A DNA stretch of 64,000 nt from Utricularia gibba (lineage: Eukaryota; Plantae; Magnoliophyta): contig NEEC01000014.1 in the NCBI GenBank assembly GCA_002189035.1, forward strand, positions 1,302,001 to 1,366,000. Reading direction: 5' to 3'. Made by a program: the position numbers and the translations under genes. The notes below the pieces were generated by a model. The model was given only the letters and a program-made list of their open reading frames with translations, searched no databases and had not been told where the DNA came from. Shown here one piece after another: positions 1 through 57,648 of the stretch. How positions within the stretch are numbered: position 1 is the stretch's first letter; every line of letters starts with the position of its first letter.

Positions 1-1693
1 AGCAGGTAACTTTGTTCTTCCTGTGTCGTGATCTGTGTTTTTGTTTTCTTGTGTGTGGAAAACCCTAATCTAAGAAAACCCTAGTGGATGGACTTGAAAG
101 AAAAACCCTAAACGCAGAGGTGTAAGTGTTTGGTAGGGCTTAAGCGCACCGGGAAGAGCTGCAGATTGCGATGGCTGAACTACCTCCGGCCGGATGTTCG
201 CCGGGGAAACATCACGCCGGAGGAGCAGCATTTGATCATGGAGCTCCATGCCAAGTGGGGAAACAGGTAACACTTATTACAGTTTTTTGCTCGAATATGG
301 TTCGAAATGAGACGTACATGCGTAATACCAACCCTTCACAAAAAGGGACAAGCTCCAAGAATAGCAAGATAGCAGTAAAGCAAGAAAAAAACCATCATAT
401 GCACAACACATGAATATTAACATTAGCCTACCTCTTGCTGTCTCCCCCAAAATAACCTGGTTTTCATCTTCCCTGTAAAACAGTAAATTCTCGCTCTGTA
501 ACTCACCCTAAAGCTCTGATCTTTTGGTCTGAGCAAGAAGGGCGGTTTCGGAATACACAAAAAGTCAAGGGTATCACTAGGAAAATGGAGGAGTATCCAA
601 AGAAATGGGGTTGAGGGGATAGAGTTTTTCTATATCGGGAAGAACCCCTTTGCAAAGAGTCACATGCACAACTCTTCTTTAACTCGAAACAGAAGCCTCC
701 AGTTGCCTCTTTGGTATTATGAACAAGACGTCTGCCTTACTACTTGTCTCTTCGTCTTTCGTAATCACCTACTTAACCTTAATTAATCACTAATAGGATC
801 ACAAACATCTTCACCAAAAAGAAAAAAGAGAAACAAGTACCTTTTCCATTTCCCCTCAGATAAAAGAAACCCCAAGTCTGCAGTTTTCTTTCCCCATATA
901 CAGACACCAGTAAGTACCTGGAAACAGAGTGATTTCCATGGGCAGCTTCGAAAACACTGCACTAATAGCCTTTACCATGAGTCTTAGATGGAAAAAGGGG
1001 CAGGATTAACCTGAGTTGGAAACCGTACTAAACCTGCAAAACCAGCAAAGGATGTGGGAAACTCAATTTTTTTTTTCAGAGAAAGTGGGAAACTGAAAAC
1101 TGGGCATCGGAGAATCGAACTTTGTTGCAGAGAAAAGGAGTAGGGGATTAGATTTTGGAGAACCTGAGTTCCGTATGTGTGTGTTATATATGTGTGTGCA
1201 GATGCCATCGCTGTGGATTTCCAGCCACACCACGTGGTGCTTTCATCCACATTGAAAACGTGCTGAAATGACTTCAATGCAAATACTTTTTCATTTATTT
1301 GTTAGATATAGAGCCCCTGCCTATTATAAATTCCCACCCAGTTGCACTGTGAAGCTGTTGTTCTTGAATTTCTTCGCAAGGTGGTCGAAGATCGCGAAGC
1401 ACCTCCCGGGGAGAACCGACAACGAGATAAAGAACTTCTGGAGGACCCGCATCCAGAAGCACATGAAGCAGGCGGAGCTCACCGGTGCCGCTCTGAATAA
1501 CCAGGCCAGCACCAGCACCCTCTCCGGCGGCGCCCCCGCCGAACTCCCCATCCTGGAGACGTACTCCCCGACGTCCTACACCGGGAGCGTCGGGGCGGCG
1601 TTCCCGGAGGGCCAGTTCCCCATCGACTCCTCGGAGGAGCAGCTCTGGAGCATGGACGATTTCTGGTCCATGAACCTCCTCAACGGGGACTGA
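1..1693 (+). CDS. MYB305-like: R2R3-MYB transcription factor, subgroup 19 (MYB21/MYB24/MYB305/EOBII-like); 5' part lies outside the window
   Basis: Exons <1-5, 137-266 (canonical 130-nt exon 2) and 1381-1693, GT-AG introns. Spliced product reads [27 protein letters not shown]...[32 protein letters not shown]-terminus [15 protein letters not shown] matches the subgroup-19 activation motif. Confidence 0.93.
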
Positions 1694-39259: not shown

Positions 39260-40267
39260 ATGAATGCAGCAGCGATGGCAGGTCTAGTCCTGGTTGTCCT
39301 CACGCTTATCGGCGTTTTTGTCGCAGGACAGGCGGCGGCGGCGGCGCCGCCGCTTCTCACCACAGGTTACTACGCTGAGTCGTGCCCTAGATTTGAGCAG
39401 ATCGTGCAAGAAACCACCACAAACAAGCAGATCGTGTCCCCGACGACAGCGGCAGCGGCGCTCCGTCTTTTCTTCCACGACTGCTTCGTCGGAGGCTGCG
39501 ACGCCTCCGTCCTAGTGTCTTCGACTCCGTTCAACAAAGCTGAGCGCGATGCCGACATCAACCGCTCTCTCCCTGGCGACGGTTTCGACGTTGTCGTCCG
39601 AGCCAAAGCCGCGCTCGAGCTCGCTTGCCCCGGCGTTGTTTCCTGCTCCGACATCCTCGCGGAGGCCACACGCAACCTAGTGGTGATGACCGGAGGCCCA
39701 TTCTACGCCGTGAAGCTCGGAAGGAAAGATTCTCTCACGTCCCGGGCCGCCGACGTCGACGGCCACCTTCCTCTCCCCAATATGCCGATGAATCAAATAA
39801 TCGGAATCTTCCGATCGAAAGGCTTCCTCATCGGCGAAATGGTAGCCCTAGTCGGCGCTCACACAATCGGATTCTCCCATTGCAAGGAATTCAGCTCAAT
39901 TCTCTACAATTTCAGCCGGACCACGGATTCGGATCCCGGTTACTACCCGGAATTCGCCAAATCCCTAAAATCCGCCTGCGCCGATTACCACAAAAACCCT
40001 ACATTATCAGTGTTCAACGACGTGATGACTCCCAACAAATTCGACAACATGTACTACAACAACATCCAGAAAGGTCTCGGGCTCCTGGCTTCGGATCACG
40101 GAATGAGCTCCGATCTAAGAACCCGACCCTTCGTCGACCTCTACTCCAGGGATCAGAACGCTTTCTTCAAGGCTTTCGGTGCCGCCATGGAGAAGATGAG
40201 CACCGTCGGCGTGAAGAGCGGCGCCGCCGGTGAGGTCAGACGACGGTGCGATGCCTTCAATAATTGA
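39260..40267 (+). CDS. PER63-like: Class III secretory peroxidase, PER31/PER63-like, single exon
   Basis: Signal peptide, distal RLFFHDCFVGGCDASVL, proximal LVGAHTIGFSHC, C-terminal RRRCDAFN. The start may instead be ATG 39275. Confidence 0.94.
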   Translation: MNAAAMAGLVLVVLTLIGVFVAGQAAAAAPPLLTTGYYAESCPRFEQIVQETTTNKQIVSPTTAAAALRLFFHDCFVGGCDASVLVSSTPFNKAERDADINRSLPGDGFDVVVRAKAALELACPGVVSCSDILAEATRNLVVMTGGPFYAVKLGRKDSLTSRAADVDGHLPLPNMPMNQIIGIFRSKGFLIGEMVALVGAHTIGFSHCKEFSSILYNFSRTTDSDPGYYPEFAKSLKSACADYHKNPTLSVFNDVMTPNKFDNMYYNNIQKGLGLLASDHGMSSDLRTRPFVDLYSRDQNAFFKAFGAAMEKMSTVGVKSGAAGEVRRRCDAFNN

Positions 40268-40686
40268 GCGAGGCCTAGGGCGCCCATCCAAGCGGATCAT
40301 CACATCGGTATACCTCCTGTCTCCCTCCCCCTCTCTTACGACGTCGTTACCACGCCGATTGCGTCCAAAATCACGGATTATGAAACGCTGCGTTTTATCC
40401 GGAAATATAATTTTTTATTTTTTTTGTTCCCTTGTGTGATTTGGTTGATTGATGATTTGGGCGTAGCAAATGAATTGAGGAATCAGCCCCATGCTTTAAG
40501 TGCGAGGGGACGACCAAAAGTAAATGGCGCGCATCCATCAAAACGCAACTCCGCTTCACATGAATGTGATGCATTTATGTCCACCTTCAGTCCCATTCCG
40601 ACCAATAAATTGTAGGGGAAAATAATAATTTATTATTTTCACAAAAATAAATAAAATAAAATAACACGTCATCGCCATTTATAGGG

Positions 40687-41138
40687 TTTACATCCTGACC
40701 CCGTGAAAAGCTTCGAATATCTCAACAACCCCGGATCTATTCAAAGTTCTCATTTCCCGCCCCACACTTTCCGTAATTTGAATTTCTTCCAATGAACTTG
40801 GCGAATAGATATACTGTTAACCGCGCTGGGGCAACAACAGCTTGCCGTAGTCGACCGAAGGTGTAGTGTTTCGATTGTTCTTTTTCAGGGAATTGGAAGA
40901 TCTGTTCTCGGAGGTTAAACCTTAGCCTTCTCATAGTCGAAGGTACCGCGGATTTTGTCTTCATTTGTTTTTGGTTTTACTACGTGATGCATTTTGATTC
41001 TTCTTTGTTTGGGAAACCTATCGAGGTCAATTTTTTTATGAGATTATGCGGTTGTTTGATCATGTTTTGAGGTGCGATATCGGGAATTTTGAATGAGCTA
41101 GCTAGGTGTATGTGTTTTGTTACCTAGAGTTTGATTAA
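40687..41138 (+). promoter_or_regulatory. Core promoter + non-coding exon 1 + 5' part of the leader intron of BUD13; copy A of a duplicated module
   Basis: Collinear with 48846-49442 (6 mismatches in the first 48 nt). Donor AG|GTACCGCGG at 40942/40943, acceptor TTTCAG ending 41217. Confidence 0.88.
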
Positions 41139-41235
41139 GAACAATGAAAAATTATGTATGCAATGCGATTGGGAAATTAGGGTTTCATAGCAAGATGTTG
41201 GAATGTTTATATTTCAGGACGATTATCAAACTCAA

Positions 41236-43531
41236 ATGGTGGATACGTCTTCAGCTGCAAAGTCACTGAAGGAGTATCTTAAGAAGTACACCAGCAACGA
41301 TGACAGTGAAATTAAAAAGAAGAAGAAAAAGAGAAAGGCCAAACCAGATGTATCAGGAGTTCTTGTGGTGGATCAAGATCCCATTTGGCAAAAGCCAATC
41401 AACCTGGGGGATGAAGATGAAGACTCGCCAGGTAACACGTTTGTTTTGGTTTTGTGTTGTTTCTCTTGCTTCTGTGCCCCAGTAGAGCGCCTTTCTCTGA
41501 ATGTGTTTCACATTGAAATTGGTAACAGAAGAGGACAGGCCACTGGTAGATGAGGATATTGAAGTGAAGCGTATGAAAAGGTTGGAGCTTCTCCGGTCTA
41601 AACGCTCTCAGGGTACCGTTTCTGAAGACGGAAGTGGTTGGGTATCCGTATCTACAGTTTCTAATGTTTCTGGTCGGGAAAGGGGAAGGCGTCGAAATGA
41701 CTCTCCGTCACCCGAGGCGCGACCAAGGTCTGATGGCCTATTAGGTCCTGATTTGTCCCCACCCCGCCATTCGCGGAGGAGGAGTCCCAGTGCAGAATTG
41801 GAAAAATCAGCAGCATCCGGTTCTAAAGGTGACAGGAGGGCCGTTCGCTATGATACACCCTCTCCTAGGGGAAACTCAGGTGGTGATGAACCGAAAGATT
41901 TATCTCCCGTTAGACGGAGGAGGAGAGACAGAAGTACGGCTCATTCTATACATGAAAGGGCACCTTCATCTCCTAAAGCCATAGACTCTGATGTATCTGC
42001 TCCACGACGGGCTCATCATGGCACCAATCCCGCAAATTCAAATTCTGATGATCCCAAAGATTTGTCTCCCGTACGCCGAGGGAGAAGAGATAGAGGTACA
42101 TCTCATTCAGCACATGAAAGGGCGTCTTCATCTCCTGAAGCCATAGATTCTGATATATCTCCTCCACGGCGGACTCGTCCTGGCTCCAATCCTGCATACT
42201 CTACTTCTGACCTGTCTCCTCCAAGGAAGGGGAAAGGTTCAAAACCGCAGGTACCTCCTAGAAGAACCGGACTAGTGTCTGCTGAAGATATTAAAGACGA
42301 AATTAGCAAAATGAAGAAGGAAACTGATGCTAGGTAATATATCTAAACCTAATCAGCACAAAAAAACATGAATACTTCTTCTCAACAAGAATCTCAATTC
42401 TAATGCTTGAGTTCAGGTTTAAGGAGATGGATCCTTCTGCAAGTGGCCAAAATGCTGCACCAGTTTACCGAGACAAAATTACTGGTTTGTTGAAATATGC
42501 ATTTCATGCATGAAATCCGATATTCCGATTACTGAAAAATGGCTTAAATTTTCTTTGTGATCACTTTACAGGAAAACGAATGACAAGGGAAGAGTTTTTG
42601 AATTCACAGAAAAAACAACTCAAGAAGGATGATCCACCTAAGGTACCTTGATGGCAGTTGATACCTTAAACTTCTCACTCCATCTATGCGTCCACCTTGT
42701 CTGAATCAAATGGTGGAAATGCATCCTCGTGCAGGAAATAAAGCTTGAATGGGGAAAAGGTCTGGCTCAAAAGCAGGAAGCTGAAGCTAGGTTAAAGGAA
42801 CTAGAATCAGAGAAGAATAAGCCATTTGCTCGAAGCAGGCAATAATATTAATTTCTCGAGTGTTACTGTCTTCTGCTATTTAGATTTTTGAATTCCCTTA
42901 GCATTGAGTTTTCTAGCTGCCCTGGGGCTGCTATTGATTGATAAACTTTTGTTTATTCATTGATAAACTTTTTTTTTTGGAAACTTCTACAACAGGGATG
43001 ATCCTGACCTGGATTCTATGCTGAAGGAAAGAGTTAGATGGGGCGATCCAATGGCACATTTGGTGAAGGCAAGTTAATGGTTTTTGTCGATCCAGGGGAG
43101 TTAAAAGCAAATGTATCTGACCATCCTTCTCAAATAATTTGCAGAAAAAGTACCCGGAGATGTCCCTCCCTAACCTGGGAGATGATGAAAAGATGAGAGA
43201 ATCAGGCTTCATAATTCCCCAGGAGATCCCAGCTCACAGCTGGATACGCAGAGGTCTTCCTGCTGCCCCAAACAGATACGGCATTAAGCCAGGGAGGCAC
43301 TGGGATGGCGTGGATCGCAGCAACGGTGGGTGTTCTTTCGATCACATTGCCTGTAGTTCTCCTTATTTCACTACTGTAAACTTCAAAGACACATACTGAG
43401 CAGCTATTGTTATTGCCCCCTTAACGCATCCCTTTCTGTGTGTAGGGCATGAGAAGGAGATGTTCATCAGGGTCAATGAAAGAAGAGCTACTGAGCAAGA
43501 AGCTTACCTCTGGTCGGTTGCGGACATGTGA
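41236..43531 (+). CDS. BUD13: BUD13/CWC26 (RES complex) pre-mRNA splicing factor
   Basis: Exons 41236-41431, 41529-42333, 42417-42484, 42572-42642, ~42735-42838, 42996-43068, 43145-43325, 43446-43531. Motifs [15 protein letters not shown] repeats, [44 protein letters not shown]. Confidence 0.93.
41885..42208 (+). repeat. Two-unit 162-nt (54-codon) tandem repeat inside BUD13 exon 2
   Basis: Units 41885-42046 and 42047-42208: [42 protein letters not shown]... versus [42 protein letters not shown]... Confidence 0.9.
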
Positions 43532-43960
43532 GCTCTTCCTGCCGGCGCACAATCTTGTATCCGTACACAAACGTCATAGCCTTCGCGGGAAGATTTGAAG
43601 CACCTTTCACTCAGGCGCATGCGAAAAACAAACCTCCTACACTTGTGAGTCGCTATCCGTATTTTCGAAAGTTTGGGGGTCGTTTTGTAAACCTTTTAAT
43701 TGTTGGGGAAATCTTGTACTCCCTTGTTTCAAGGGCACCAACGTACGTCATCCCTGAACTGGGATGTCTTAATTTCTAAGAAATTAAATATCTAAAATTA
43801 CCTACTCGGTCAACTTCCGCGTGGGAAATAAATCTAAAACTTGGCTTTCGCCTCAAGACAAGGCATCGTTTATATAAGGGAGGTCTCCGGCGATCCCTGC
43901 GACGGGCACCGCCGACTCCCAACCGCGAAGACACCAGGTTCTTTCTACGCATCCGAAAAA

Positions 43961-44598
43961 ATGGCCGGAGGAACAGAAGCTTTCCCTGATTTAGGGAGGC
44001 ACTGCCAGCATCCCGATTGTAATCTGCTCGATTTCCTTCCTTTCATCTGCAACGCCTGTTCCAAGGTTTGGTTCTCTGCCTGAAATTTTCAATTCAATTC
44101 GATACGCTCGGAAGTGTATGATACGTAGGTGCAATTGCTGCAGACCTTCTGTTTGGAACATCGATCTTACAAATCGCACGAGTGCCCGAATTCCGAAGTC
44201 AAGAGCCGTAAGGTTTTGGTTTGCGAGATCTGCTCCACCGCGGTCGAGACCACCGGGCACGACGGAGACGAAGAAAAGAAGATTCTAGAGAAGCACGAGA
44301 AGTCGGGGAATGCGATCCTAGGAAGAAGAAAAAGCCGATTTGCTCCATCAGACGGTGCAAGCAAGTCCTAACGTTCTCCAATACGGCCACGTGCAAGAGT
44401 TGCGGAATTCAGACTTGCCTTAGGCATCGGTTTCCGGCGGATCACGCCTGCTGCCGGCCGCTGGCAACGCCGCATGTCTCCGTGGCTCCCAATATCAAGC
44501 TCCTCAACAGCATTCTGGCGGCGAGGAAGGGGATAGATTGCGGAAGCAACGGCCAGGCCACTGCTTCGCCCTCCGCTCCAAGCGTTAAGGCCCATTGA
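43961..44598 (+). CDS. SAP12-like: AN1-type zinc finger stress-associated protein 12 (PMZ-like); one -1 frameshift in this sequence
   Basis: Exons 43961-44065 and 44144-44598. [43 protein letters not shown], and a second finger [13 protein letters not shown] that is in frame only with one extra G at 44305-44308. Confidence 0.92.
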
Positions 44599-44892
44599 TT
44601 CACTGTTAGAAGTACCATAATTCGATTCAAACTTTTGATGTGAAATTGTTCAATGAAATACACTGTTAGAAGTCACCATACGCATCATGAGCATTAGGAT
44701 TGTAGAACTTACATCACCTTCGGGAAAACGAAGCTCATAATTCCGACAACGATCTGCGAAATTCTAGAAAACATGACAACCTAGTCCCTGCAACGAACCA
44801 GAATTGTCCATTGCTGCTAATGAAGAGGGTTGTTTGGAAGATCAACTGGCACAATCCCAATGATATAATATTATCTGCTCAGCATATCCAAA

Positions 44893-46219
44893 TCAACGCG
44901 ACCAGAACCTAATGGGTATTTTCTTCCTAAGTCCCTGCGAAATGATAACAGATCAAGAGCTAGTAACTGAGGAAAATACAGAGGAGTTCACGAAGATGGA
45001 GTGTGATATGTAATGAGGTTATGTACCCAAGAGGTGCTTTTAGAAGCCAATGAATAACATGGCATAGACTCCTACGGAATGCATAAAACAAATGGTACCT
45101 ACCATTGGTATACCCAGCTCCTTTAGGTGCCTGTCTCGCATTTGCTTCAATGCGGCCATATCTATCTGCAAGAAAGAACAATAGCGAAGGTTCAACACAA
45201 AGGACTCGCAAGCATCAGCAACTTAAGTAGTGTTGATGGGGGCAGGGACTGAGTACCTCTTCAGCTTTAAGTTAATGGAATATCTTTCCAAAGAAAGTGA
45301 ACTCTAGCCTTTGAAGTTCCATGGGAATCCTTGGGCGAGAAGGAATTGGTGCTTTCGACATACACAGTTCAACAGCTTGGGACAGTGTGACATGCCCTGT
45401 TCTTGAAGCATCAACTGGCCTTGCTATTGGAAGTCGAGGCAATTCTTCTGATGTCCCTCTCGGGTTAGACATCCTGATTGATTATTTTGGAGTACTTAAA
45501 GGGTACCTCGTTTATACCCCACTCGAAGATGGCCAAGAGGAATAAGAAGTTGCCATCGAACGCTCAGTTAGAGTTCCAGTAATCCTCATGGAAGAAGCTT
45601 CTCGCCATGAAACTTTCTCACTTTTTCATATTCCTCCAATGCCTAATCAACCACTTCAGCCCTTGAAGCTCTTTTGTGCCTTAGCTTCGAATGGAGATCA
45701 TTTGGACACAATTGAGAATCAGCAGCTACGACATCAAAAAAACACAAGAAAATCAAAAGAGCATATTGAAACATGGACACATAATTCACCGAACAAACAA
45801 GCTGATCCATGGTTACAATTCTCATCCTACACAGTACACACTCCCATCTTCAAAATCATAGAGCTGTGGATCATTGAATAATAGCTCTCAAAAAAGAACA
45901 ACCCGCTGACCTTTTGTTCTCATGCAATCTGCAGCACTCCTACCAAAAGACTCCGATCCTGATCTGTTATTCCCAAATAACCAAGTGCATTTTCGCGACC
46001 GCCGGCGGAATCTCCCCATGACTCCTTCACTACTTTCCGCGCATAAAAAACAAGCAACCAAAATCGACCACCATCTTCAACCTTACATTCCACGTACGCA
46101 TCACATGATTTCAGATCGCAAACTAATTTAAAAACCTTCTTAGTCGATCAACCGAGAAAAAGAAAAACGCTCACCTATCCGCAGCAACCGAGCCGTATTG
46201 CAACATGCGAATTCGGCAT
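44893..46219 (-). pseudogene. Unprocessed pseudogene of a plant SAM (sterile alpha motif) domain protein
   Basis: Exon 45165-45103 = IDMAALKQMRDRHLKELGIPM, next exon from 44934 = GLRKKI, preceding exon ends SLSLERYSIN-KAEE. First exon 46219-46175 = MPNSHVAIRLGCCG*, matching the family start MSRPQVTITLGRSGQ. In-frame stops TAG 46177-46175, TAG 45645-45643, TGA 45588-45586, plus frameshifts. Splice sites are retained. Confidence 0.8.
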
Positions 46220-48389
46220 CTAGCGCCAGAGAGAAACAGAGAGATCGCCAGAAGAAACCGGTTTCTTGGAACCCCAGACACTAATTTCGCGGCTCAGCAA
46301 AAATTGGAAAAATGTACGATCATTTATTCTTTATTTAAAAAAAAATTAAAAAAATAAAAATGATCATTTTTTTCATATATTTATAAATAAATATACTTTA
46401 AAGTTCCAGAATAAGAAACGAAAATAAATTTACAAAACTCAAATTAATAAATATTCAAAATTTTAGTAAGAATATTTAAAATATTAGCATATTATTTACA
46501 AAAAATGTAAAAATTAAAAAGTAAAAATAGTCATTTTTCAAATTTATTTTTACTCAAAAATTGATTTTAATTATATTATATATTTTTATTTTAAGTTGGA
46601 AAATTTGCAAAACAAAAACCTAATATTTCTATCTGTGCTATTTTTTTTCTTTAGGTCGTAATCCGCAGGTCTGAAATGTTGTTGTTGTCGTCCACATAAA
46701 TGCCTTGTGTTGTATGCATCGGGCGCTCTGTATTTACTGCGTTTTCACCTGTTGTCAGCCCTTTCCTTTACCCACAAAATGGAGGGATTCGCAGCAGCAG
46801 CTGGAGCAGCAATCACCCCTCGACCCAGAACACGCAGAACGCTCTACCAATGCTCTTCTCGCGTATTCCTCCTCCAAAACGAACAAGTATTCATCATCCT
46901 ACGGCATACGATCAGAACGACACCAAGCACACTTGAGAGGATTCATGCAGCAGTTCTGCGCACGGATTGGCATTACAGACGACAGTGAACGCTCGTAAAG
47001 ACGAGGTTTCCAGCGTTTCATGTGAAAAGGAATCCATGATGGGTGAGCAAAGTCGAGTACTTTATCGTATTTGTCATGATATTTAACGTTTTCATACTGT
47101 TTTCCCCACACAAGGGGACGAATCTGGAGATTGATACTGCAAGAAAATTTCGTACTTTCTTTTCTTGGTGTAGCTAGTGAATGGCTAGGAGGTTGGTTAT
47201 CTGTCTGAAAAGAGGGAATTGGGAACACTCTCCGATCATCTGGTTAACCAGGTTTTCTATTTATGGGATCGGAGTTACATGCATGGAGACCCTCATCACC
47301 CTTTAGACTGTAAGAATGAACAGCACACAGGGAGTAGTGTGGGGTGGTTTTCGTGTAATTTTCCAATCCTTTGTTTATATAAAAAGCATCGAGAATGACA
47401 ATGTAATGGTGTTTTACAGGCGTGGAAACGAGTTGTAGGAGCCAATCCGGCCACCCCACAAACAAGGGGCGTTCACCAAACCCTAAGTTGGGTAAGAAAG
47501 AAACCCTAATCCCAAAAGGGAAAGAGTTGGGATCAGAGAATCGATCCCCCCAGCCTCAGGAACGTACACTAGATACAGGAGGATGCAAACGGAGACAGAT
47601 CTGCAAAGCAAGCGCGAGCTGTTGGAGAAGAAAGTGAAGAAGTGTGGATTCGGACCATTATGCTTGATTCCCCATCGAACGAACGAAGGCAGCAAAGGAT
47701 CAACGGATCCCTTCTTCCTTCACCACTTCAACGCAAGGAAGACAGTCGTGGAAGAAGCCATGATGAGGGCGACGCTGGATCTCCATGATGATGAGCTGCT
47801 TGCTTATCTTCAGGAAGAAACAAATAGGAGAGAGAAGAGAGCGTCTGAAACAAGAAGATGGAAGAAGAAGAAAAACAAGTGTGTGGTGTGGGATGCGGTG
47901 TGGCTCGTGAGTGATGTGATGATGAGCAGCGGGAGGGGCGCACCGGCATGCGAAGATGCCAGGGGCCAGGTTTTTTGGTTGGGTGTAATAATTGAAAGTC
48001 CAGACAGACTAATCATTATGTTTTTGCCCCTCCCTCCTTTTCCTGCCCTTCATGTTTTCTTTCTTTTGCTTCGCCATTCAGCCACCATTGCAGGCCCAAG
48101 TAACTGCCTAAATTCAACTGTGTAATAATCAAGACCACACAGTTGAATTGGAACACATACGCTGTGTCTGTATTTAGACATGGTGAGATGCTCCATTCTC
48201 ATTCTCAAGGTGGTGATGATCCCTGTCCTTCACCTCTTCCTTGTTGTAGATATTGGGAATACACATATATGCAGATTAGATGGCCTGTTAGCTTGTGAGG
48301 CATTCTGTTTCCATGCAGACCTCTTGCAGCCGGGAGAACGATGGTGAAGGAAGGCCTCATCGAATACATCCTTCTTGGCTGCTGCTCCC

Positions 48390-48790
48390 CAGAAGCTTGC
48401 TTGAGATTGCAGATCACCTCTTCAATGGATATATGCGCCTTTGCTTCTGCCTTTTATGTTCACAATGACAAGAGAATGATCTTTCAAACACACGAAGAAC
48501 TCATTCTTACAGCCACGTCCAAAATTTGAGCCATAGCAGCAAGAAAACTACAGAGTTTGTGGCACTTTTTTGGGAGATCATAAGATAGGAAGCTTTTCCC
48601 AATACTCTACGGATGCAGGATACAGAAAAAGCTTCAGCCTCCCGGACCGCTGCGGCGAGCTCGGCGGCCGACCGGCGTTAATGCTTTTAGGTTGAAAAGG
48701 AGAGTTGGGAGTTGGTAAGAAGCTTCTACAATGCGCTTGAAAGGAAGAATATGAAAATGGCGGTTGATGTTGTAGCTGGGAATCATCATT
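48390..48790 (+). pseudogene. Degraded PLS-class pentatricopeptide repeat fragment
   Basis: Broken frames give SLLEIADHLFNG, LSHSSKKTTEFVALFWEIIR*EAFPN, GELGVGKKL and DVVAGN, which resemble consecutive P-L-S repeat consensus pieces. Several stops and frameshifts. Confidence 0.45.
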
Positions 48791-48845
48791 TTCAGTACCA
48801 TTTGCTACTGCAGAAGGAAGAGACCTTCACGTACCAGTCCACCCA

Positions 48846-49442
48846 TTTACATTCTAACCCCGTAAAAAGCTTTGAATATCTAAACAACCCCCGTACTATA
48901 TAAAACTCTCATTTCTCCCCCTACACTTTCCGTAATTTCAATTCCTTCCCAAAACTCGGCAAATAGATACTCCGGTTGTCTGTTAATTTCGCTGGGCGAC
49001 AACAGCCTTTCATCGTTAGTCGGATCAAGGTGTAGTGTTTCGATTGTTTTCGTCAGAGAATCGGCAGATCTGTTCTCAGAGCTTAAACCTTCGCCTTCTC
49101 GTAGTCCCAGGTACCGCGGATTTTGCCTTCATTTCTTTTTGTTTCATTATGTGATGCTTTTTGATTATTCTCTAACCTATCAAGGTGAAATTTTTTATGA
49201 GATCTAACGGTTGTTTCGTTTTAATTTATGATATTGATGAGATTCTTTTTTTGCAATGAACTATAAGGCGCCATATCTGGGATTTTGTTTCATCATGTTA
49301 TAGTATTGATTAGGATCCGTCGAAGCTGCAATTGTGTAACCCCAGTGTAGATTCACGCCGAATTATAGATTGTGTGTTGAGTAAATGGTTAGTATGCTGT
49401 AGCTAGCTAGGTATCTGAATTTTCTTACCAGAGTTTGATTAG
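48846..49442 (+). promoter_or_regulatory. Core promoter + non-coding exon 1 + leader intron of SEC13; copy B of the duplicated module
   Basis: Collinear with 40687-41138, with ~140 extra nt around 49225-49400. Donor CAG|GTACCGCGG at 49110/49111, acceptor CTAG ending 49569. Confidence 0.88.
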
Positions 49443-49596
49443 GGATGCTGGCTATGTTTATTTGTTATTTTCTTAGCAATTAACACTTGCTCGGATGTGG
49501 GATTTACATCAAATTCTCTGTTGTTGTTATTTCTGAGGTGTGTATGGTGTTTGGATGCCTGGTTTCTAGGTTTTGAACAAGTTTCACCTGAAAAGA

Positions 49597-50505
49597 ATGC
49601 TGCCTGGACGGAAGATAGAAATAAATGAAGGTGATAATGTTCATGATGTATCCATGGATTACTATGGAAAACGTGTGGCAATAGCCCTGTCTGATGCTAC
49701 AATAAAGATAATTGGTGTTGGCAGCGACGCTTCTAAGCACCTAGCCACTTTGAGTGGGCATCGAGGCCCCGTTTGGAAGGTGGCATGGGCGCATCCCAAG
49801 TTTGGTTCAGTGCTTGCCTCTTGTTCTTATGACGGCAAGGTCATCATCTGGAGCGAAGGAAGCAACAATATCTGGTCTCAGTACCATGTTTTCAGCAATC
49901 ACACATCATCTGTGAACTCTATTGCTTGGGCGCCATATGAGGTTGGTTTGTGCTTAGCATGTGGATCTTCGGATGGAAATATTTCCATCTATACATCTCA
50001 ACCAGATGGCAGCTGGGAGACTGCAAATATAGAGCAAGCACATCCTACTGGAGTAACGTCAGTGGCATGGGCTCCGGCAACAGCCCCTGGTGCGCTCATC
50101 GGATCTAGTGCCTCCGGAACTGTCCAGAAACTAGCTTCAGGTGGCTGTGACAACACAGTTAAAGTATGGAAGCTGCACAATGGCATCTGGGAAATGGATT
50201 CTGCACCAGCCCTTCAAAAGCATTCTAATTTGGTCACTGATGTGGCCTGGGCGTCGAGCTTGGGGCTTCCCACGTCAACAATCGCAAGTGCTTCCGAGGA
50301 TGGCACCGTCGTCATATGGACGGCAACCAGGGAAGGAGGTCATTGGGATGGCAAAGTGCTGAACGATTTCAAGGCTCCCGTGTGGAAGGTTTCTTGGTCC
50401 TTGACCGGAGATTTATTGGCTGTTTCATCTGGAGACAACAATGTGACATTGTGGAAGGAAGAAGGTGGAGTTTGGCTAGAGACCACTGCCACCGTGAACC
50501 AGTAG
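49597..50505 (+). CDS. SEC13: SEC13 homolog (WD40; COPII/nuclear pore), divergent, intronless CDS
   Basis: VHDVSMDYYGKR, GHRGPVWKVAWAHPKFGSVLASCSYD, LACGSSDGNIS, KLASGGCDNTVKVW, PVWKVSWSLTG. ATG 49597 follows the leader-intron acceptor at 49569. Confidence 0.93.
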   Translation: MLPGRKIEINEGDNVHDVSMDYYGKRVAIALSDATIKIIGVGSDASKHLATLSGHRGPVWKVAWAHPKFGSVLASCSYDGKVIIWSEGSNNIWSQYHVFSNHTSSVNSIAWAPYEVGLCLACGSSDGNISIYTSQPDGSWETANIEQAHPTGVTSVAWAPATAPGALIGSSASGTVQKLASGGCDNTVKVWKLHNGIWEMDSAPALQKHSNLVTDVAWASSLGLPTSTIASASEDGTVVIWTATREGGHWDGKVLNDFKAPVWKVSWSLTGDLLAVSSGDNNVTLWKEEGGVWLETTATVNQ

Positions 50506-50949: not shown

Positions 50950-53900
50950 TCACTGTAATTTAGAGGATTCCAAGAGCTGATGAAACCGTTGGGTTGCAGC
51001 CGCCTTGTGAGCTTGTGAATATTCATCTGTTGGTTGATGCCTTCTCCGTCCCAAACGCACAAAATAATCAGCAGTGTCGAGGACATATGAGATCTGAAGC
51101 AGGCATGAAGCACTCACAGATTAAGGTAACCAAAAGAAATTTAGCTAAGAAGCCTGTGTGTGTCCGAGCCAAAAATTGTCAATTTCTGCTTCGGCAGAAT
51201 AAAATGGAACTATACCTTGGATGTGCTGGATGCCATCTTGCACTCCAACCCATTTATGGTCCGGGTGCTTTCAGTTGCCTTAACAAGGGCAGAAATTTCG
51301 TCCAGATTGTGGTATTTCTGCATGTTCCTGGGACCAGCTCATGTAGGTTAGAGACGCAAGTTGATCAGCAATTACATTGGCAGCAGAGCTATCGGAAGTT
51401 GAAAAAACCCAGGTCACATGTGAAGGCATTGATTCAACTTATCATGGTCTCTGCAGTAAATTGATTGATTTACTGCAGAAAACGCCACATACCATTAGAT
51501 GAACTTTCTAGGGAGATATTGAGGATCTGTACCTCTTTAGCATAATAGCCGATGACTCCTTCCTCCCATGATTAACTGAAAGATAGTCATACTGAAGATA
51601 TGTAACAAAATTAGGATCAACTGAGACTGCAACGACTTCAGACTTCTCATTTCTGTCATCCATCAGTTGAATAGATAACCGAGTGGGATTGTATGTCTGC
51701 ATTAAAAAGGGACGGAGCTCAGGATGGACCAAAATCCCCTCAGAATAAAAGAAAAATCAGATGGCTTACACATTCGATCCGGTATACATTCTCGTCATGC
51801 AGAAGCACATGGACATTTTCATAGTGAACTGAATCCACATATTTCTGTGGCTTTCTGGACTTTTCGTAGTCAAACAACTGAAGAAGTTTACAGCACACGT
51901 CATCACTTGATACAATTTGGAGCTGTAAAAGCGCAATCCAAATTCAGAATTCAAGAAAATATATGAGCTAGAGGTGACCTTCCAACATACACGAGGAGTA
52001 AGAAAAACTTACCTGCTTCACCAACTTATATATCAGCTTGTCCAATGTAAAAAGGACATACGATTGGTTTCCAACCAGAGATTGGCAATCATCTTCAAAC
52101 TTTGCATTGTCAGAAGAGCCATCAAGCAAACTAAACAACGCATTCATAAACCTGAGGCGAGAGATAAACATTATCCAGAAAATAATTAAAGTGGGACTTC
52201 AAATATGTTGGAAAACTCAAGTGTCACTCTGTTACCTTGCATTTGGATCAGATGGTGCATCCTTTGTCGTTTTCAATCTTGTATCACTAGATACAGAATG
52301 CATCTTTGCAAACGATATTCTTTCATATAGTGTCTGCAGCAGTAACAGAGCAAATCATGTAGCATCCAAGAGATAATGCGAACTCAGATGATGGGGAGGG
52401 AACAGTTATAAATAAAAATATACCTGATGCAACCGAAAGAGTATGTACAAGGCATCATTTCCATAAAGAACCTGCTGCTCTTTCACCGTATCGTAAACTA
52501 ATGGTGAAGAAACAAGCTTGCAAATAGGCTTACATGTCACCAAATATTGCTCTGAAAGGGGAAGTGATTCACCATCACCAGCATGATAATTTGTGCCACA
52601 TGCAATCTCGGTCTCCCCTTCACTCTCAGCTTTAACATCAATGTCATCGTGGTCCACATCTTGCTCCTCGTGTTCTTCACGTGAGCAATCTTCAGAAGCA
52701 GACCCGGTTCCGGAAACATCTTCTCCATCCACGGAAATGTTTTCGCTGTCCTCATCATCTGCATCTACATCATTCTTATCCCTGGTATCTGCACAAATAT
52801 CCTCATTAATCCCCATTTGAACTCGAATCTTCGCACTAACTCCATTTTCCTCAGGTACAGCTTGCATACTACACTCTTGCGAGGATGCAAAATTGTCTTC
52901 AAAATCACAATTGGGTGACAGCTCACCCTCTTCCTTCTCAACTATGCAAGGATCAACAGAATCCTCCTTAAATATGTTAGTTCTGGACGCCTCCTCATAT
53001 TCAATATGTGCAGATGGATTCAATTTCAACATTTCCTCACCCAGCTGCATAATAATATGATTATATTAATAATTCTAATAATAAAAATAATAGTTCAGAC
53101 CCACAAGATCACATGATTAGAAGCGGAGAAGACCAGATATCGGGAAAGGGAAAACTAGTCAATAGTAAGAGAGGGTAAATCAGACAATTTAGTCACTCAA
53201 AATTCCTATTAAAGTGAAACTTAGAGTTCAATATCAGGAGGACAACCTCTGATGACAGCCTATCGTCTGCATCAAATTTTTCAGTGTCAACCTTCTCAAT
53301 GGGCCCATTCTTCGTAAGTGCAGTGTTTGCAACCAACACTTCAAATAAAATACATACAATTAGTCAGAATCCAATAGTAATCATGAAGAAAGGATAATTC
53401 CCGACTCACACATATGATTAGAATCCGGCATTGAAGAGGCACATATGTTATTTCTTTCAGTAGAGGGCATATCTTGTCCCTCTTTCACCCCTTCAACCAT
53501 GCTCACGGAACGAGCACTAAAATTCATAAGTTGGGATTGCATAGCAGAAGCATTATTGTAGGTCCTGAAGTCCTCGGAGGGTGTTACTGCAGCATCACCA
53601 ACAGGTTGGGCTTCAGCTTCGTCTGAATTCACGGTCTTATGATTTGGGCCACTGTCTCCCGTGGCATCCATTCCATTAGATCGGGTGCATATCCCCAGAA
53701 TGGGTTCAATGAAGTGAGTCCAAACTCTCAACACTTTTTGCATTTGATCTCTTGTTGAGCAAATCTCTTCACATGAGTACTTAATAATTCTGAAAATATC
53801 ATCCTGGACATCAGCATCAGCATACTCAAATTCCATGTGTGGACTGCAAGAATGCCTACTTCCAGCTGCAAGACCAAGAACAGCATCATCCTCCTTCTGC

Positions 53901-56900
53901 ATTTTATCCTTGATTTCTTTAATCTCAGCAACTAAGGCTGCCACAAGAAGATAAAAGAATGAATCAACATAAAGAAGATAAGGTTCAAGAACATTTCAAG
54001 TTCTCTAAGTGCAAAGCATTTAATACTACGCAGAAAGAGAGATGCAATAATGAAACATAAATAGCCTACATTTTGTACTCAAATTCTTTGAATCCTGCTG
54101 CTTAAAATAAAAGCTTCTGTGATCAAGTGTCTTGTAATGATTCTTCTGATATATCTCAGCCCAAACTTTGTTAAAATCTGAACGGCACTTAGTCCACTCC
54201 TCCTGCTTCTGCTTTAGGCGTGTCAGGATGACAGGTAACGCCAGAGAGGGATTTTTCCGCAAAATGTCCATTACATCCAGACCATGGTCACCATAGAGGC
54301 GCTCAATGCATCTTAAGTTGAGAGCTGTTTAAACCAAGAAAGAATTCAACAACTAACGGAAACTACAAATTTCTATATTGAGAGTTGTGAAATTTCAAGT
54401 GACTTGACAAGCCTGTGAAATGATCCTCAAACCGTATGTGGCCCTCTGTTCCAATTGAGTTATCTGTGATACTATTCAAAAGTTCCTCCACACGCTTGGA
54501 CGTAGAACTCACCGACTCCAACAGCATATCTAGTTCAAACCTGAAAAAAATATAATTAGGAATTCTCAGGCACTAGGAATGACATGACAAGATGGATAGA
54601 TGAAATGGAATACAACTTCAAAGTCTAAACCAATCCATAAACCATGTTAGCTTTCTATACCTATCATCTTCACATCTAAAAAGGCTTTCTTCGTACTGGT
54701 TTCTTCGCATGTGTTTAAAAGAATAATCCTCACTTCCAGATGTTACAGACACCCATTTGTCATTTAGAACCTGGTTACCAAGATCTGACCTCTGGCTAAC
54801 GGAGCACATTGGTACTGCATGGTCATAATTAACATAACGTCATTGAATGCAGATTACACTAGATTTACTTTTTTTAAAAAAAATCTGCATAAAGAAATAT
54901 TACATCATCAGGAAGAAGCCGATAACTGGGAGTACAGCATTCAGAATTAGAAAGGTCGAGCTCCTGAATGGACTTCCCAAAGTATTTAGAGTTGGGTCGT
55001 TCTTTCTCTTTACCACCCTCACCTTCACGTCTCTGCTCCTTTTCCTTATCCTCGAGTTTCAAATGTTTCGAGGAGCTTGCTTTGTTCCAGGATGACTCTG
55101 CTTCCAATGAAAAAAAAAATAGTCACGATAATATTTTACCCAGAAACAACAACAATGAAAACAGAAAAGCCATCTCTTTATGAACGAAGAATAATAGAAA
55201 ATGAGTAGATTGCATACTTTTTCCCATAACACCAGGCAGAAATCCATCTGAAGAATAAGAGAATGTATCAGAAACCCAACTAAAAAAGTAGGTTTTAAAC
55301 AGTCAAAACCAATGCATACCCATGCGTTCACACCGTTCCAGAAACTCATGAAAGCGCTCCAAAAGGTCTTGATGTTTTCCAATTATAGCAGCGACCTGTT
55401 CGCACATCAAGTGAGAAGAGATCCTACGCATTTTAGTTTTCCAAAATGTTGAAGGAAAACCATCAAGAGATACAGAAAAAACCAGTTTATCATCCTTCAC
55501 AAAAGAAAGAAACAAATCCACCTTGTTGATGATACTTTCCAAATCTAATTTCATTCACACTCACATAATAAACACATTTTGTAATGGAATAATCAGATAA
55601 ATAGAAAACTCCTCAATTTCCCAACATAAGAATGAAATAATTTGTCACAGGCTAAGCAGTCCTACCAAATCCTGCAATTCATGCCTACTGATGATTTCTT
55701 GGCTGTAAAGGTGAAGGCATTTCAAAAAATCCTGGTAATCATCTGCATTATGCAACCTCTCTTTGACTTTTTCACAGAAGCGAAACTCACGGCTGTATGC
55801 ACCTGCAAGACCAAACATGAAATAATTGTCAAAAGTGCGCATATGAATCGTAAGAATATTAAATGCAAAGATGAAATGTAAACTGCACGGACAATTATCT
55901 TTCTAACAGATTTTAGATGACATATTTCAAGAAAGAGAACAACTCTTTGGCTTTTTGCAACTTTTTGAACTCCGAGTAAGATGACTTTTGGCATGATTAA
56001 AGAGATCCGGGAATGCTTGATGGAACAGACTTTTAGATGATACAAGTGAAATCCGAAAAACAGGAGAGAGAAGTCTCACTTTTCAATGCATCTTTGTTAT
56101 CAAAGGAAGCAAACTTTGCAGTTCCTCCAAAGTCATCAGATTTTTTAGCAGACTTCCTTTTTTCCGAAACCCGATGCACATTAACTTCCAACTTATTCTC
56201 AGTGTCAAAATCCCCGCCATCCATATCACAGTTCCTCCTGTCTCTGTCCCTTTCAGCATGCTTCTTTTGCTCCTTGTGAATTTTTGTGGCTGTTTTATCT
56301 TCTTCGATATCTGGGCGCTCAACACTAAGGTCTCGTTCTATGTTTGGGTCTACAGACCTTTCTTTAAGTTGTCTCTGCTCATGAAATAACATGCCAAATA
56401 AACATCGATACAAGAGCACCAAAAACAAGCAATTGATTGCATTGGAAATAAACTTATAAAAACCTTCTCGATGTATGCGTTCCTCATTGCAGATAAGGAA
56501 GAGTTCCTCTCATCATTCCCGTTAGAGAAATGACGGCCCAAAGAACCATTAGAATATGCAGTAGCAGCTGCTGGCAAAAATTTTGTGAACTCATCTAGGA
56601 GGTCCGTATGGCCACGAAAAAGTGCAGCTACCTTCAGGTGAATATATTCAGATTGGTATGGTTTGACAATGAAAAACCCAACAACAGACACACTTAAGTG
56701 CACAGAAAATAAACTCCAGACATGACCAGCTCAAAGGAAAACACATACCTCTCTATAAACTTGAGTTATACTCTTGTGTTCCTTCCGGTACATGTTCAAG
56801 ATATCAAGAAATGACTTGTAAATGTGCTCATCATTCTGAAATCGTTTCTACAGGCGAATAATATCACTTAATAATGTGCATCATGGGATAAATAAAGACA

Positions 56901-57648
56901 AGAACATCATAAAATTAACAATTTTCACCTTAATTTTGTTCACAAAACAGATAGCTTCTTCAAACTCAACTGTCCGCTTAGGGGGAACTTGTTCATCATC
57001 AGTGAGAGATATTTCATAGCCCTTAGGCAAAAATGTATTAAATCCAAGGATTAGACTAGGATGCCCCTTAAACAATTCTTTCACTCTACGTATGACACCA
57101 GGTGTATCGATTCTGTGGGAAATAAAAGCTTCAGAATGCTTCAAGTGATTTCTAAAATTCAAAAGGTTTTCTTGGTAGAAACAAAGTTTTACCGTTGACC
57201 CTTGAAATCTTTCATAACATCAAGAAAGCAATCATATTTTCCCCTTTGATCTTGGAACGTGTCTTTGACTTGCTTCAAATAGCTTAAGGCATCATTCGTA
57301 GTGAGCTTTTGGGTGCTGCCAGGAGCTTCACCACCTGCCCCACTATTTCCAACATTAACAACACCACTCACACTATTTCCACCAGCCGCAGGAGATTGTG
57401 AAGTTCCGTGCCTATGACAATATTAATATGCGAATATGATTCATTCAAGTGATGAAAATCTGGAATCTTCGAATAAAATGGAATTGTTCATTCAAGCATC
57501 TGAACACAAGTCACCTTACAAAGAATGTCTACATTGATAAAATAATGGAAGAATTTAAAAGCTCTTACGAATCAGCGCGGGGAAACGTAGAACTAAACGG
57601 TCGCTTAAATGGAGGCCTCGAAGAAACCTCCTCACACAATCTCTTCAT
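50950..57648 (-). CDS. SNL1/2-like: Paired amphipathic helix protein SIN3-like (SNL1/2 type); one -1 frameshift in this sequence
   Basis: About 22 exons from MKRLCEEV (57648) to the stop at 50952-50950. PAH1 [38 protein letters not shown] region [53 protein letters not shown](P)MCS needs one extra base at 54811-54812. GC donor at 54412-54411. Confidence 0.94.

What the first reader, a model, noticed from the sequence alone, without database searches (positions are those of the whole stretch)
40687..49569. Two unrelated genes (BUD13 and SEC13) share a duplicated promoter / non-coding exon / intron-donor module 8.2 kb apart
Seen: 40687-41138 and 48846-49442 are collinear. The first 48 nt differ at 6 positions, shared blocks continue (ctttccgtaattt, gtgtagtgtttcgattgtt, agatctgttctc, ttaaacctt, ggtaccgcggattttg, agctagctagg, agagtttgatta), and both copies have a GT donor at the equivalent position. 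Each intron then ends in a different, non-homologous acceptor joined to an unrelated CDS. Inference: a local duplication copied one gene's promoter and leader and spliced it onto another gene, i.e. promoter capture through a 5' UTR intron. From memory, SEC13 lies next to SNL1 in Arabidopsis, so SEC13 may be the resident and BUD13 the borrower, but the direction is not proven. The divergence suggests an old, retained event.
Basis: partly seen in the sequence, partly recalled or inferred. Interest (0 to 1): 0.75.

Follow-up and report, generated by a model that had tools for sequence, protein, structure and literature searches.

The report
Duplicated promoter-leader cassette before BUD13 and SEC13
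In this compact plant genome (bladderwort family by best protein match), about 470 bases holding a core promoter, a non-coding first exon and the start of a leader intron occur twice, 8.2 kb apart, in front of two unrelated housekeeping genes; this is a real but fairly ordinary case of a gene front end copied by local duplication, and its use by both genes is still unproven.

Summary
Window 40666-41137 and 48829-49441 are collinear homologues. The core match is blastn E 6e-84, with about 83% identity at aligned bases (Jukes-Cantor distance 0.19) and many small indels. This is the only dispersed repeat in the 64 kb.

Copy A lies upstream of a BUD13 gene. Its start codon at 41236 is confirmed against other plant BUD13 proteins. 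Copy B lies upstream of a single-exon SEC13 coding sequence (49597-50505). Both copies keep the same AG|GTACCGCGGA donor, and each is followed by a different acceptor just before its start codon.

No coding frame, known RNA family, terminal inverted repeat or relic of either coding sequence goes with the module. It is therefore a small local DNA duplication, not a transposon, an assembly artefact or the edge of a larger duplicated block.

Internal hints suggest SEC13 is the source and BUD13 the recipient. Only copy B has an intact TATA box and a leader free of upstream ATGs. The private intron tail of B is T-rich like the shared intron, whereas the private 80 nt of A is A-rich and carries a telo-box.

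Earlier notes list at least eight similar cases in this genome, so the single case is ordinary and the recurrence is the more interesting part.

The parts
40666..41137 (+). Module copy A: proximal/core promoter, predicted non-coding exon 1 and the 5' part of the leader intron, upstream of BUD13
   Evidence: Collinear with 48829-49441. It begins just after the AT-rich 3' region of the peroxidase gene.
40738..40746 (+). Degraded TATA position in copy A (tattcaaag)
   Evidence: Aligned with the intact TATA box of copy B.
40767..40942 (+). Predicted non-coding exon 1 of BUD13 (start approximate); contains a 24-codon upstream ORF starting at ATG 40792
   Evidence: 84% identical to B exon 1 at aligned bases. 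Indels of 1, 2 and 8 nt exclude a conserved reading frame. The upstream ORF is shown. The transcription start is inferred from the TATA box and pyrimidine patch of copy B.
40943..41217 (+). Predicted BUD13 leader intron (275 nt), from donor AAG|GTACCG to acceptor TATTTCAG|G
   Evidence: Read directly from the sequence. Splicing was not verified by RNA.
41138..41217 (+). Segment private to copy A (no counterpart in B): A-rich, with a telo-box at 41178-41185 on the minus strand. Possibly BUD13's original proximal promoter or leader.
   Evidence: No similarity to B (z -0.4). Composition A 36% / T 33%, against T 45% in the shared intron. Telo-box match.
41218..41431 (+). BUD13 exon 2: 18 nt of leader, then the start codon at 41236 and the first 65 codons
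   Evidence: The N-terminus aligns with Salvia, Ipomoea, Vitis and Fragaria BUD13 from the first Met.
41236..43399 (+). BUD13 coding region (several exons; the 3' end was not mapped precisely)
   Evidence: Pfam Bud13 PF09736, E 1.4e-11, at 43139-43399. 106 BUD13/CWC26 homologues found with exon 3.
48829..49441 (+). Module copy B: proximal/core promoter, predicted non-coding exon 1 and the 5' three-quarters of the leader intron, upstream of SEC13
   Evidence: Collinear with copy A.
48897..48905 (+). Canonical TATA box (tatataaaa) of copy B, followed by a pyrimidine patch
   Evidence: Read directly from the sequence.
48926..49110 (+). Predicted non-coding exon 1 of SEC13 (start approximate); no ATG
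49111..49569 (+). Predicted SEC13 leader intron (459 nt), from donor CAG|GTACCG to acceptor TTTCTAG|G. An alternative acceptor at 49476|49477 would leave three upstream ATGs in the leader.
   Evidence: The private 3' part (49442-49569) is T 45% / A 17%, like the shared intron.
49597..50505 (+). SEC13 coding sequence, a single exon of 302 codons plus the stop
   Evidence: ORF. Best hits are plant SEC13, led by Genlisea aurea at 75%. WD40 repeats.
39260..40267 (+). Class III peroxidase gene; its 3' end abuts copy A
   Evidence: Pfam peroxidase, E 1.5e-71.
43961..44598 (+). Gene with two AN1 zinc fingers, lying between the two module copies
   Evidence: Pfam zf-AN1.
44700..48534 (-). Unidentified gene or genes, probably on the minus strand; a candidate start ATG at 48534 would lie head-to-head with SEC13
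   Evidence: No Pfam hit. Positive AT skew, as over the minus-strand SIN3-like gene. Codon-usage-positive minus-strand ORFs. The ATGGCT start followed by a GTAAG donor was read. The strand assignment is an inference.
52406..57422 (-). SIN3-like (SNL) gene, tail-to-tail with SEC13
   Evidence: PAH repeats at 56884-57219 (E 5e-12) and 55306-55554.

Best explanation
A small local DNA duplication put a second copy of one gene's 5' cassette in front of an unrelated gene 8.2 kb away on the same strand. The copied piece is about 470 bases in the shorter copy. It holds roughly 100 nt of proximal/core promoter, a non-coding first exon of about 180 nt, its splice donor and the first part of the leader intron. 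The most likely source is SEC13, whose copy is the more intact; the recipient is BUD13. Whatever start site BUD13 uses, half of the 969 nt between the upstream gene's stop codon and the BUD13 start codon is now module sequence. The likeliest reading is that BUD13 is transcribed from the copied core promoter (now without a TATA box, relying on its pyrimidine patch). The copied exon would then be spliced from the inherited donor at 40943 to an acceptor at 41217, 19 nt before the start codon, so the protein is unchanged. Shown here: the homology, its limits, its non-coding nature, the conserved donor, the gene identities, and the absence of transposon features and of coding relics. Inferred: the transcription starts, the splicing, the direction of copying and the mechanism. 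Two mechanisms fit. One is a templated 'filler' insertion during double-strand-break repair. The other is a tandem duplication whose junction fused the SEC13 intron to the BUD13 leader, followed by deletion of the redundant upstream gene copies.
For: The homology is far beyond chance and collinear over five blocks, and it is the only dispersed repeat in 64 kb. Divergence is even across the promoter part (79%), exon 1 (84%) and the intron start (86%), and the indels break any frame, so the module is non-coding. Rfam finds no known RNA family between 38 and 52 kb. Both copies share an identical AG|GTACCGCGGATTTTG donor block, and each has a plausible pyrimidine-rich acceptor just upstream of its ATG. 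The BUD13 start codon at 41236 is the conserved one. SEC13 is a single coding exon behind a leader intron. tblastn finds no relic of either coding sequence elsewhere in the window; the BUD13 exon-2 query in that run was cut one base out of frame, so for BUD13 this rests on exon 3 and the C-terminal exon. Neither the upstream nor the downstream flanks are similar. No terminal inverted repeats are shared by the two copies. Polarity hints: only B has an intact TATA box. The B leader has no upstream ATG, while A has a 24-codon upstream ORF. B's private intron tail has the same T-rich composition as the shared intron, while A's private 80 nt is A-rich and carries a telo-box, a motif enriched in this window (10 found against 2.2 expected). 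Shuffling of regulatory elements by duplication junctions is a documented route (PMC5460883). Earlier notes of this scan report similar front-end copies in the same genome, some said to be RNA-confirmed; these are leads only.
Against: No transcript evidence was obtainable, so use of module A by BUD13 is only a prediction. Copy A lacks a TATA box and has acquired an upstream ORF, as expected if it were decaying. The donor GTACCG is only moderately close to the plant consensus. A telo-box 51-58 nt upstream of the BUD13 ATG could mark an independent proximal promoter inside the supposed intron. The runs of perfect conservation are no longer than neutral divergence at about 17% would leave by chance, so there is no statistical sign of constraint on copy A. 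Genome-wide copy number is unknown. The polarity argument rests on 80-130 nt of base composition and on single motifs.
Confidence: 0.6

Rival explanations
1. Copy A is an inert relic. The duplication is real, but BUD13 is still transcribed from its own proximal promoter within about 100 nt of its ATG (41138-41235). Module A would then be decaying intergenic DNA, acting at most as upstream regulatory sequence and not as exon 1 plus intron.
For: The TATA box is lost in A and an upstream ORF has appeared. The private A segment differs in composition from an intron and carries a telo-box 51-58 nt before the ATG. There is no statistical excess of conservation at functional sites.
Against: The donor block and the pyrimidine patch / initiator region are intact in A. 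A good acceptor sits 19 nt before the ATG. A 99-nt private segment leaves very little room for an independent promoter. Several earlier notes in the same genome were judged to show copied cassettes in actual use (unchecked here).
Confidence: 0.3
2. The polarity is reversed. The cassette is native to BUD13, and SEC13 is the borrower. For example, an 8.16-kb block starting at the module was duplicated in tandem, and the redundant second BUD13-to-neighbour copies were then deleted from within the second intron down to just before SEC13.
For: The module spacing (8159-8305 nt) equals one block from module A to the end of the intervening genes, as a tandem duplication would give. This lineage is described as deletion-prone (PMC11530473). 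The SEC13 copy here is unusually fast-evolving, so it might tolerate a change of promoter.
Against: B has the more intact promoter and a clean leader. B's private intron tail is intron-like, while A's private tail is promoter-like. No relic of BUD13 coding sequence lies after module B.
Confidence: 0.25
3. The module is a member of a dispersed repeat or transposon family (MITE, Helitron fragment or Pack-MULE-type capture) that happened to insert upstream of both genes.
For: It is a short, mobile-sized unit found in front of unrelated genes. Genome-wide copy number could not be checked here.
Against: There are only two copies in 64 kb. No terminal inverted repeats or target-site duplications occur at the shared boundaries. 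The two copies have the same orientation and are collinear with promoter, exon and donor features. A 22-mer shared by both copies has no exact match in the metagenome collection (weak evidence).
Confidence: 0.07
4. Assembly artefact, or motif-level convergence of two housekeeping promoters.
For: None found.
Against: The 17% divergence with many indels and entirely different flanks is incompatible with a collapsed or duplicated assembly segment. An E-value of 6e-84 over about 380 collinear bases is incompatible with convergence.
Confidence: 0.01

Closest known systems
Chimeric and regulatory-shuffling structures created by tandem or partial duplications (e.g. Drosophila yakuba, Rogers et al. 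2017, PMC5460883)
   Same: A duplication junction places the promoter and 5' sequences of one gene in front of the body of another, changing regulation without changing the recipient's protein.
   Different: Here only non-coding sequence is shared. The copies are diverged (about 17%) and fixed in an assembly rather than segregating. The redundant duplicate genes that a tandem model predicts are absent. No expression effect was measured.
Plant leader (5' UTR) introns with intron-mediated enhancement (e.g. PMC4225707, PMC3808313)
   Same: A non-coding first exon is followed by an intron ending just before the start codon, and the whole SEC13 coding sequence lies in the next exon. Such introns often carry expression-boosting sequence near their 5' end, which is the part that was copied.
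   Different: No enhancement was tested. The point here is the duplication of the cassette, not the intron's activity.
Partial gene duplication giving a new gene front end in Arabidopsis (EXOV/EXOVL, PMC8824575)
   Same: A lineage-specific partial duplicate acquires a different 5' region.
   Different: In that case a coding part was duplicated to form a new gene. Here an old, essential single-function gene (BUD13) receives a foreign non-coding front end.
Gene-fragment capture by Pack-MULEs or Helitrons
   Same: Short pieces of gene 5' ends are moved to new positions.
   Different: No terminal inverted repeats, no target-site duplication, no Helitron ends and no extra copies in the window.
Other front-end copies noted in this same genome by this scan (SWO1>DRB4, UBP>EFL1, RPS20>pICln, ICR/TMN12/bS6, PPR>mS38)
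   Same: The same architecture: a decayed copy of a nearby gene's promoter, first exon and intron start heads an unrelated gene.
   Different: Here the two genes are not adjacent, since at least three genes lie between them.

Membership tests
Local segmental (partial-gene) duplication | Collinear similarity well beyond chance between two nearby loci | tested here: met
   blastn E 6e-84; five collinear blocks; shuffling controls
Local segmental (partial-gene) duplication | Low copy number and unique flanks | tested here: inconclusive
   Two copies in 64 kb and no flank similarity. The whole genome could not be searched.
Functional promoter/leader capture | Core promoter elements present in both copies | tested here: inconclusive
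   B has a TATA box plus a pyrimidine patch. A keeps the pyrimidine patch and initiator region, but its TATA box is degraded.
Functional promoter/leader capture | Shared splice donor retained, with an acceptor upstream of each start codon | tested here: met
   Identical AG|GTACCGCGGA donor. Acceptors at 41217 and 49569 (or 49476). This is sequence-level evidence only.
Functional promoter/leader capture | Transcripts of both genes start in the module and splice from the shared donor | not testable with these tools
Neither protein of this species is in the protein collection.
Functional promoter/leader capture | Recipient coding sequence unchanged (purely non-coding graft) | tested here: met
   BUD13 starts at its conserved Met in exon 2. 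Exon 1 has frame-breaking indels and no conserved ORF.
Transposable element (MITE / Pack-MULE / Helitron) | Terminal inverted repeats or Helitron termini at the shared boundaries | tested here: not met
   No inverted pair sits at both ends in both copies. Boundaries were read.
Transposable element (MITE / Pack-MULE / Helitron) | Target-site duplication flanking each copy | tested here: not met
   The flanks were inspected, and no short direct repeat brackets the homology.
Transposable element (MITE / Pack-MULE / Helitron) | Many copies genome-wide | not testable with these tools
   Only the window is available: two copies.
Known structured RNA gene (snoRNA, miRNA etc.) inside the module | Match to an Rfam family | tested here: not met
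   No match with E up to 1 in 38-52 kb.

The most novel reading that the evidence does not exclude
This pair may be one instance of a recurrent, lineage-specific process in a strongly compacted bladderwort-family genome. Earlier notes of this scan list at least eight cases of a gene's promoter, first exon and intron start reappearing in front of a nearby unrelated gene. If such grafts are truly enriched here compared with other plant genomes, then frequent small duplications plus deletion-driven loss of redundant DNA would be systematically recycling a few working 5' cassettes. That would replace lost native promoters and tie the regulation of unrelated housekeeping genes together, giving a concrete mechanism for how gene regulation survives extreme shrinkage of intergenic DNA.
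Probability: 0.25. Interest if true: 0.65.

Novelty: new member of a known kind. Interest (0 to 1): 0.35.

Why it matters
On its own this is a clean natural example of a non-coding promoter / leader-exon / intron-donor cassette shared by two unrelated essential genes: a splicing factor of the RES complex and a COPII / nuclear-pore component. It can be used to ask how much of a plant promoter's activity travels with about 100 nt of upstream sequence plus a leader intron. Its wider value is as one data point in what looks like a repeated pattern in this very compact genome. That pattern would be worth a systematic, genome-wide count with transcript support.

Tried and rejected
- **Contig look-up.** No RNA or outgroup DNA evidence was therefore obtained.
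- **Metagenome scan.** A 22-mer shared by both copies had 0 exact matches.
- **Scan-notes look-ups.** Searches by sequence and by relatives returned nothing.
- **Rfam.** Nothing was found over 38-52 kb.
- **PDB search.** The BUD13 exon-2 peptide gave only a chance hit. The start codon was confirmed instead by alignment with plant BUD13 proteins.
- **The 44.7-48.8 kb interval.** Pfam on 20 ORFs gave no significant family. The ESM Atlas gave no usable hit for the 180-codon ORF at 47583-48122. The gene or genes abutting module B stay unidentified, and their minus-strand orientation is inferred only from AT skew, codon usage and a candidate ATG-plus-donor.
- **Extension of homology to the acceptors.** A collinear 18-nt match (41194-41210 ~ 49444-49461) is not significant and was not counted.
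- **Searches deliberately not run.** The third word-based protein search and the large representative search would only have named a bystander gene. A joined (spliced) BUD13 protein model was not built or searched, following the operators' rule; the exons were searched separately by reference.
- **Flawed query.** In one search the BUD13 exon-2 tblastn query was cut one base out of frame. That sub-result is disregarded.


Full report
**What is there**

The window is plant nuclear DNA with tightly packed genes. Around the finding the order is as follows.

| Position | Strand | Feature | Evidence |
|---|---|---|---|
| ORF at 36216-36608 | + | PIG-N gene, last exons | Pfam PigN, |
| 39260-40267 | + | class III peroxidase | Pfam, E 1.5e-71, |
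| 40666-41137 | + | module copy A | |
| 41236 to about 43400 | + | BUD13 | |
| about 43961-44598 | + | gene with two AN1 zinc fingers | |
| 44.7-48.6 kb | probably - | unidentified interval | |
| 48829-49441 | + | module copy B | |
| 49597-50505 | + | SEC13, single coding exon | |
| about 52.4-57.4 kb | - | SIN3-like gene | PAH repeats, |

The best SEC13 match is Genlisea aurea at 75% identity, followed by other Lamiales. Together with the gene density, this points to a bladderwort-family plant with a small genome. Neither protein of this species is present in the protein collection.

**Checking the observation**

The repeat is real.
- blastn aligns 40687-41057 with 48846-49216 at E 6e-84. The repeat finder gives five collinear families with spacings of 8159 to 8305 nt.
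- Local alignment with shuffling controls adds 41070-41091 ~ 49266-49287 (z 4.5, 0 of 300 shuffles). It shows no similarity upstream of the module or downstream of 41137 / 49441.
- A gapped global alignment moves the left edge out to a shared CACGT at 40666 / 48829. It gives identities at aligned bases of 79% for the promoter part, 84% for exon 1 and 86% for the intron start. Overall p is 0.168 and the Jukes-Cantor distance is 0.19.
- Copy B has about 150 extra intron bases in two blocks.
- A self-comparison of all 64 kb finds this pair as the only dispersed repeat. The only other hit is a 162-nt tandem duplication inside BUD13 exon 3.

**What the module contains**

- Copy B has a canonical TATA box at 48897-48905, followed by a pyrimidine-rich patch and a CA initiator-like site near 48925. 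This predicts a non-coding exon 1 of about 185 nt ending at CAG|GTACCG (49110|49111).
- Copy A keeps the pyrimidine patch, the initiator region and the identical donor block (AAG|GTACCG, 40942|40943), but its TATA position reads tattcaaag.
- Exon 1 cannot be coding. The two copies differ by indels of 1, 2 and 8 nt. Only A has an ATG (40792, a 24-codon upstream ORF), and B has none.
- Rfam finds no known RNA family between 38 and 52 kb.
- The BUD13 reading frame starts at 41236, 19 nt after a good acceptor (TATTTCAG|G, 41217|41218). This Met is the conserved BUD13 start, because the first 65 residues align from residue 1 with Salvia, Ipomoea, Vitis and Fragaria BUD13.
- In B, the acceptor at 49569|49570 gives a 212-nt leader free of ATGs. 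An alternative acceptor at 49476 would leave three upstream ATGs.
- The module is therefore a promoter / leader-exon / intron-start cassette, and the two proteins share nothing.

**What it is not**

- There are no terminal inverted repeats or target-site duplications at the shared boundaries.
- There is no third copy in the window.
- tblastn finds no relic of the SEC13 or BUD13 coding sequence next to the 'wrong' copy (apart from a mis-framed exon-2 query that I disregard).
- The flanks are not similar.
- The 17% divergence and the many indels exclude an assembly duplicate.
- A transposon family cannot be fully excluded without the rest of the genome, but nothing in the sequence suggests one.

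**Which copy is the source?**

Only internal hints are available, and they all point the same way.
- The TATA box is intact only in B, and only B has a leader without an upstream ORF.
- The part of intron B that has no counterpart in A (49442-49569) is T 45% / A 17%. This is the same composition as the shared intron and as an internal BUD13 intron.
- The 80 nt private to A (41138-41217) are A 36% / T 33% and contain a telo-box at 41178-41185. That motif is enriched in this window (10 matches against 2.2 expected) and elsewhere in it sits just upstream of an ORF start (47478 and 47501).
- The simplest reading is that B's intron is native along its whole length. Copy A would then be a truncated copy joined to what used to be BUD13's own proximal promoter or leader.
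- From memory, not tested here: Arabidopsis SEC13A (At3g01340) lies two genes from SNL1 (At3g01320). If so, the SEC13-SIN3-like neighbourhood here is old, which fits SEC13 being at home.
- I put SEC13-to-BUD13 polarity at about 0.6.

**Mechanism**

Two routes fit the data, and they cannot be separated here.
- **Templated insertion.** About 470 nt from 8 kb away is inserted during double-strand-break repair.
- **Tandem duplication plus deletion.** The block from the BUD13 leader to the SEC13 intron is duplicated in tandem. Its junction directly fuses the SEC13 intron to the BUD13 leader, and the redundant upstream copies are later deleted.

Junction-made regulatory chimeras are well documented in Drosophila (PMC5460883). 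Strong deletion pressure on intergenic DNA and duplicates is the accepted picture for the small Utricularia genome (PMC11530473). A mirror-image tandem model would make SEC13 the borrower; it is kept as a rival.

**Is copy A used?**

This is the main open point.
- **For use:** the donor block, the pyrimidine patch and a good acceptor are intact. Only 99 nt of private sequence is left for any independent promoter. Earlier notes of this scan also judge most similar cassettes in this genome to be used; these are leads, not evidence.
- **Against use:** the TATA box is lost, an upstream ORF has appeared, a telo-box lies 51-58 nt before the ATG, and there is no statistical excess of conservation at functional sites.

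Either way, 472 of the 969 nt between the peroxidase stop codon and the BUD13 start codon are module sequence. BUD13's upstream regulatory space has therefore been largely replaced.

**Comparison with what is known, and novelty**

This is a new member of a known kind: acquisition of a promoter and leader through partial or local duplication. It differs from classical chimeric genes in being purely non-coding, and from transposon-mediated capture in lacking any element features. The same scan has noted at least eight comparable cases in this genome. The single case is therefore ordinary, and the possible genome-wide recurrence is the more interesting hypothesis. It needs a controlled census.

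**Limits**

- The interval from 44.7 to 48.6 kb remains unannotated.
- One word-based protein search and the large representative search were left unused, because they would not bear on the claim.

Noticed in passing
window 41872-42195 (+): BUD13 exon 3 contains an in-frame tandem duplication of 162 nt (54 codons), with the two units about 80% identical. That divergence is similar to the divergence between the two module copies.
   Followed up: partly
window 49597-50505 (+): This SEC13 is intact but unusually divergent. Its terminal branch is 0.41 against a median of 0.06 in a 23-sequence tree. It differs at 12 of 128 positions that are invariant in 22 other plant SEC13 proteins, against 3-6 for other species. 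No identical or near-identical protein is in the collection. It may be a fast-evolving paralogue, or it may reflect a lineage-wide high substitution rate.
   Followed up: partly
window 44700-48600: A stretch of about 4 kb in a very gene-dense region has no Pfam-recognisable ORF. A 180-codon plus-strand ORF (47583-48122), preceded by two telo-boxes (47478, 47501), has no usable look-alike in the ESM Atlas. AT skew and codon usage instead favour minus-strand exons, with a candidate start ATG at 48534 head-to-head with SEC13.
   Followed up: partly
window 60-110, 6858, 10757, 40682, 41178, 47478, 47501: The telo-box AAACCCTA is enriched (10 matches against 2.2 expected) and occurs in clusters. 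One copy (40682-40689) lies in a 7-9 nt insertion at the left edge of module A that copy B lacks.
   Followed up: partly
window 49249-49318 and 49398-49443: Two stretches of the SEC13 leader intron both resemble the single block 41096-41137 of copy A. This suggests a secondary internal partial duplication within intron B.
   Followed up: partly
window 36200-57400: Intergenic spacers are only about 300-1000 nt throughout (PIG-N, peroxidase, BUD13, AN1, SEC13, SIN3-like). The SEC13 / SIN3-like neighbourhood may be conserved with Arabidopsis; that gene order is recalled from memory and was not tested.
   Followed up: no
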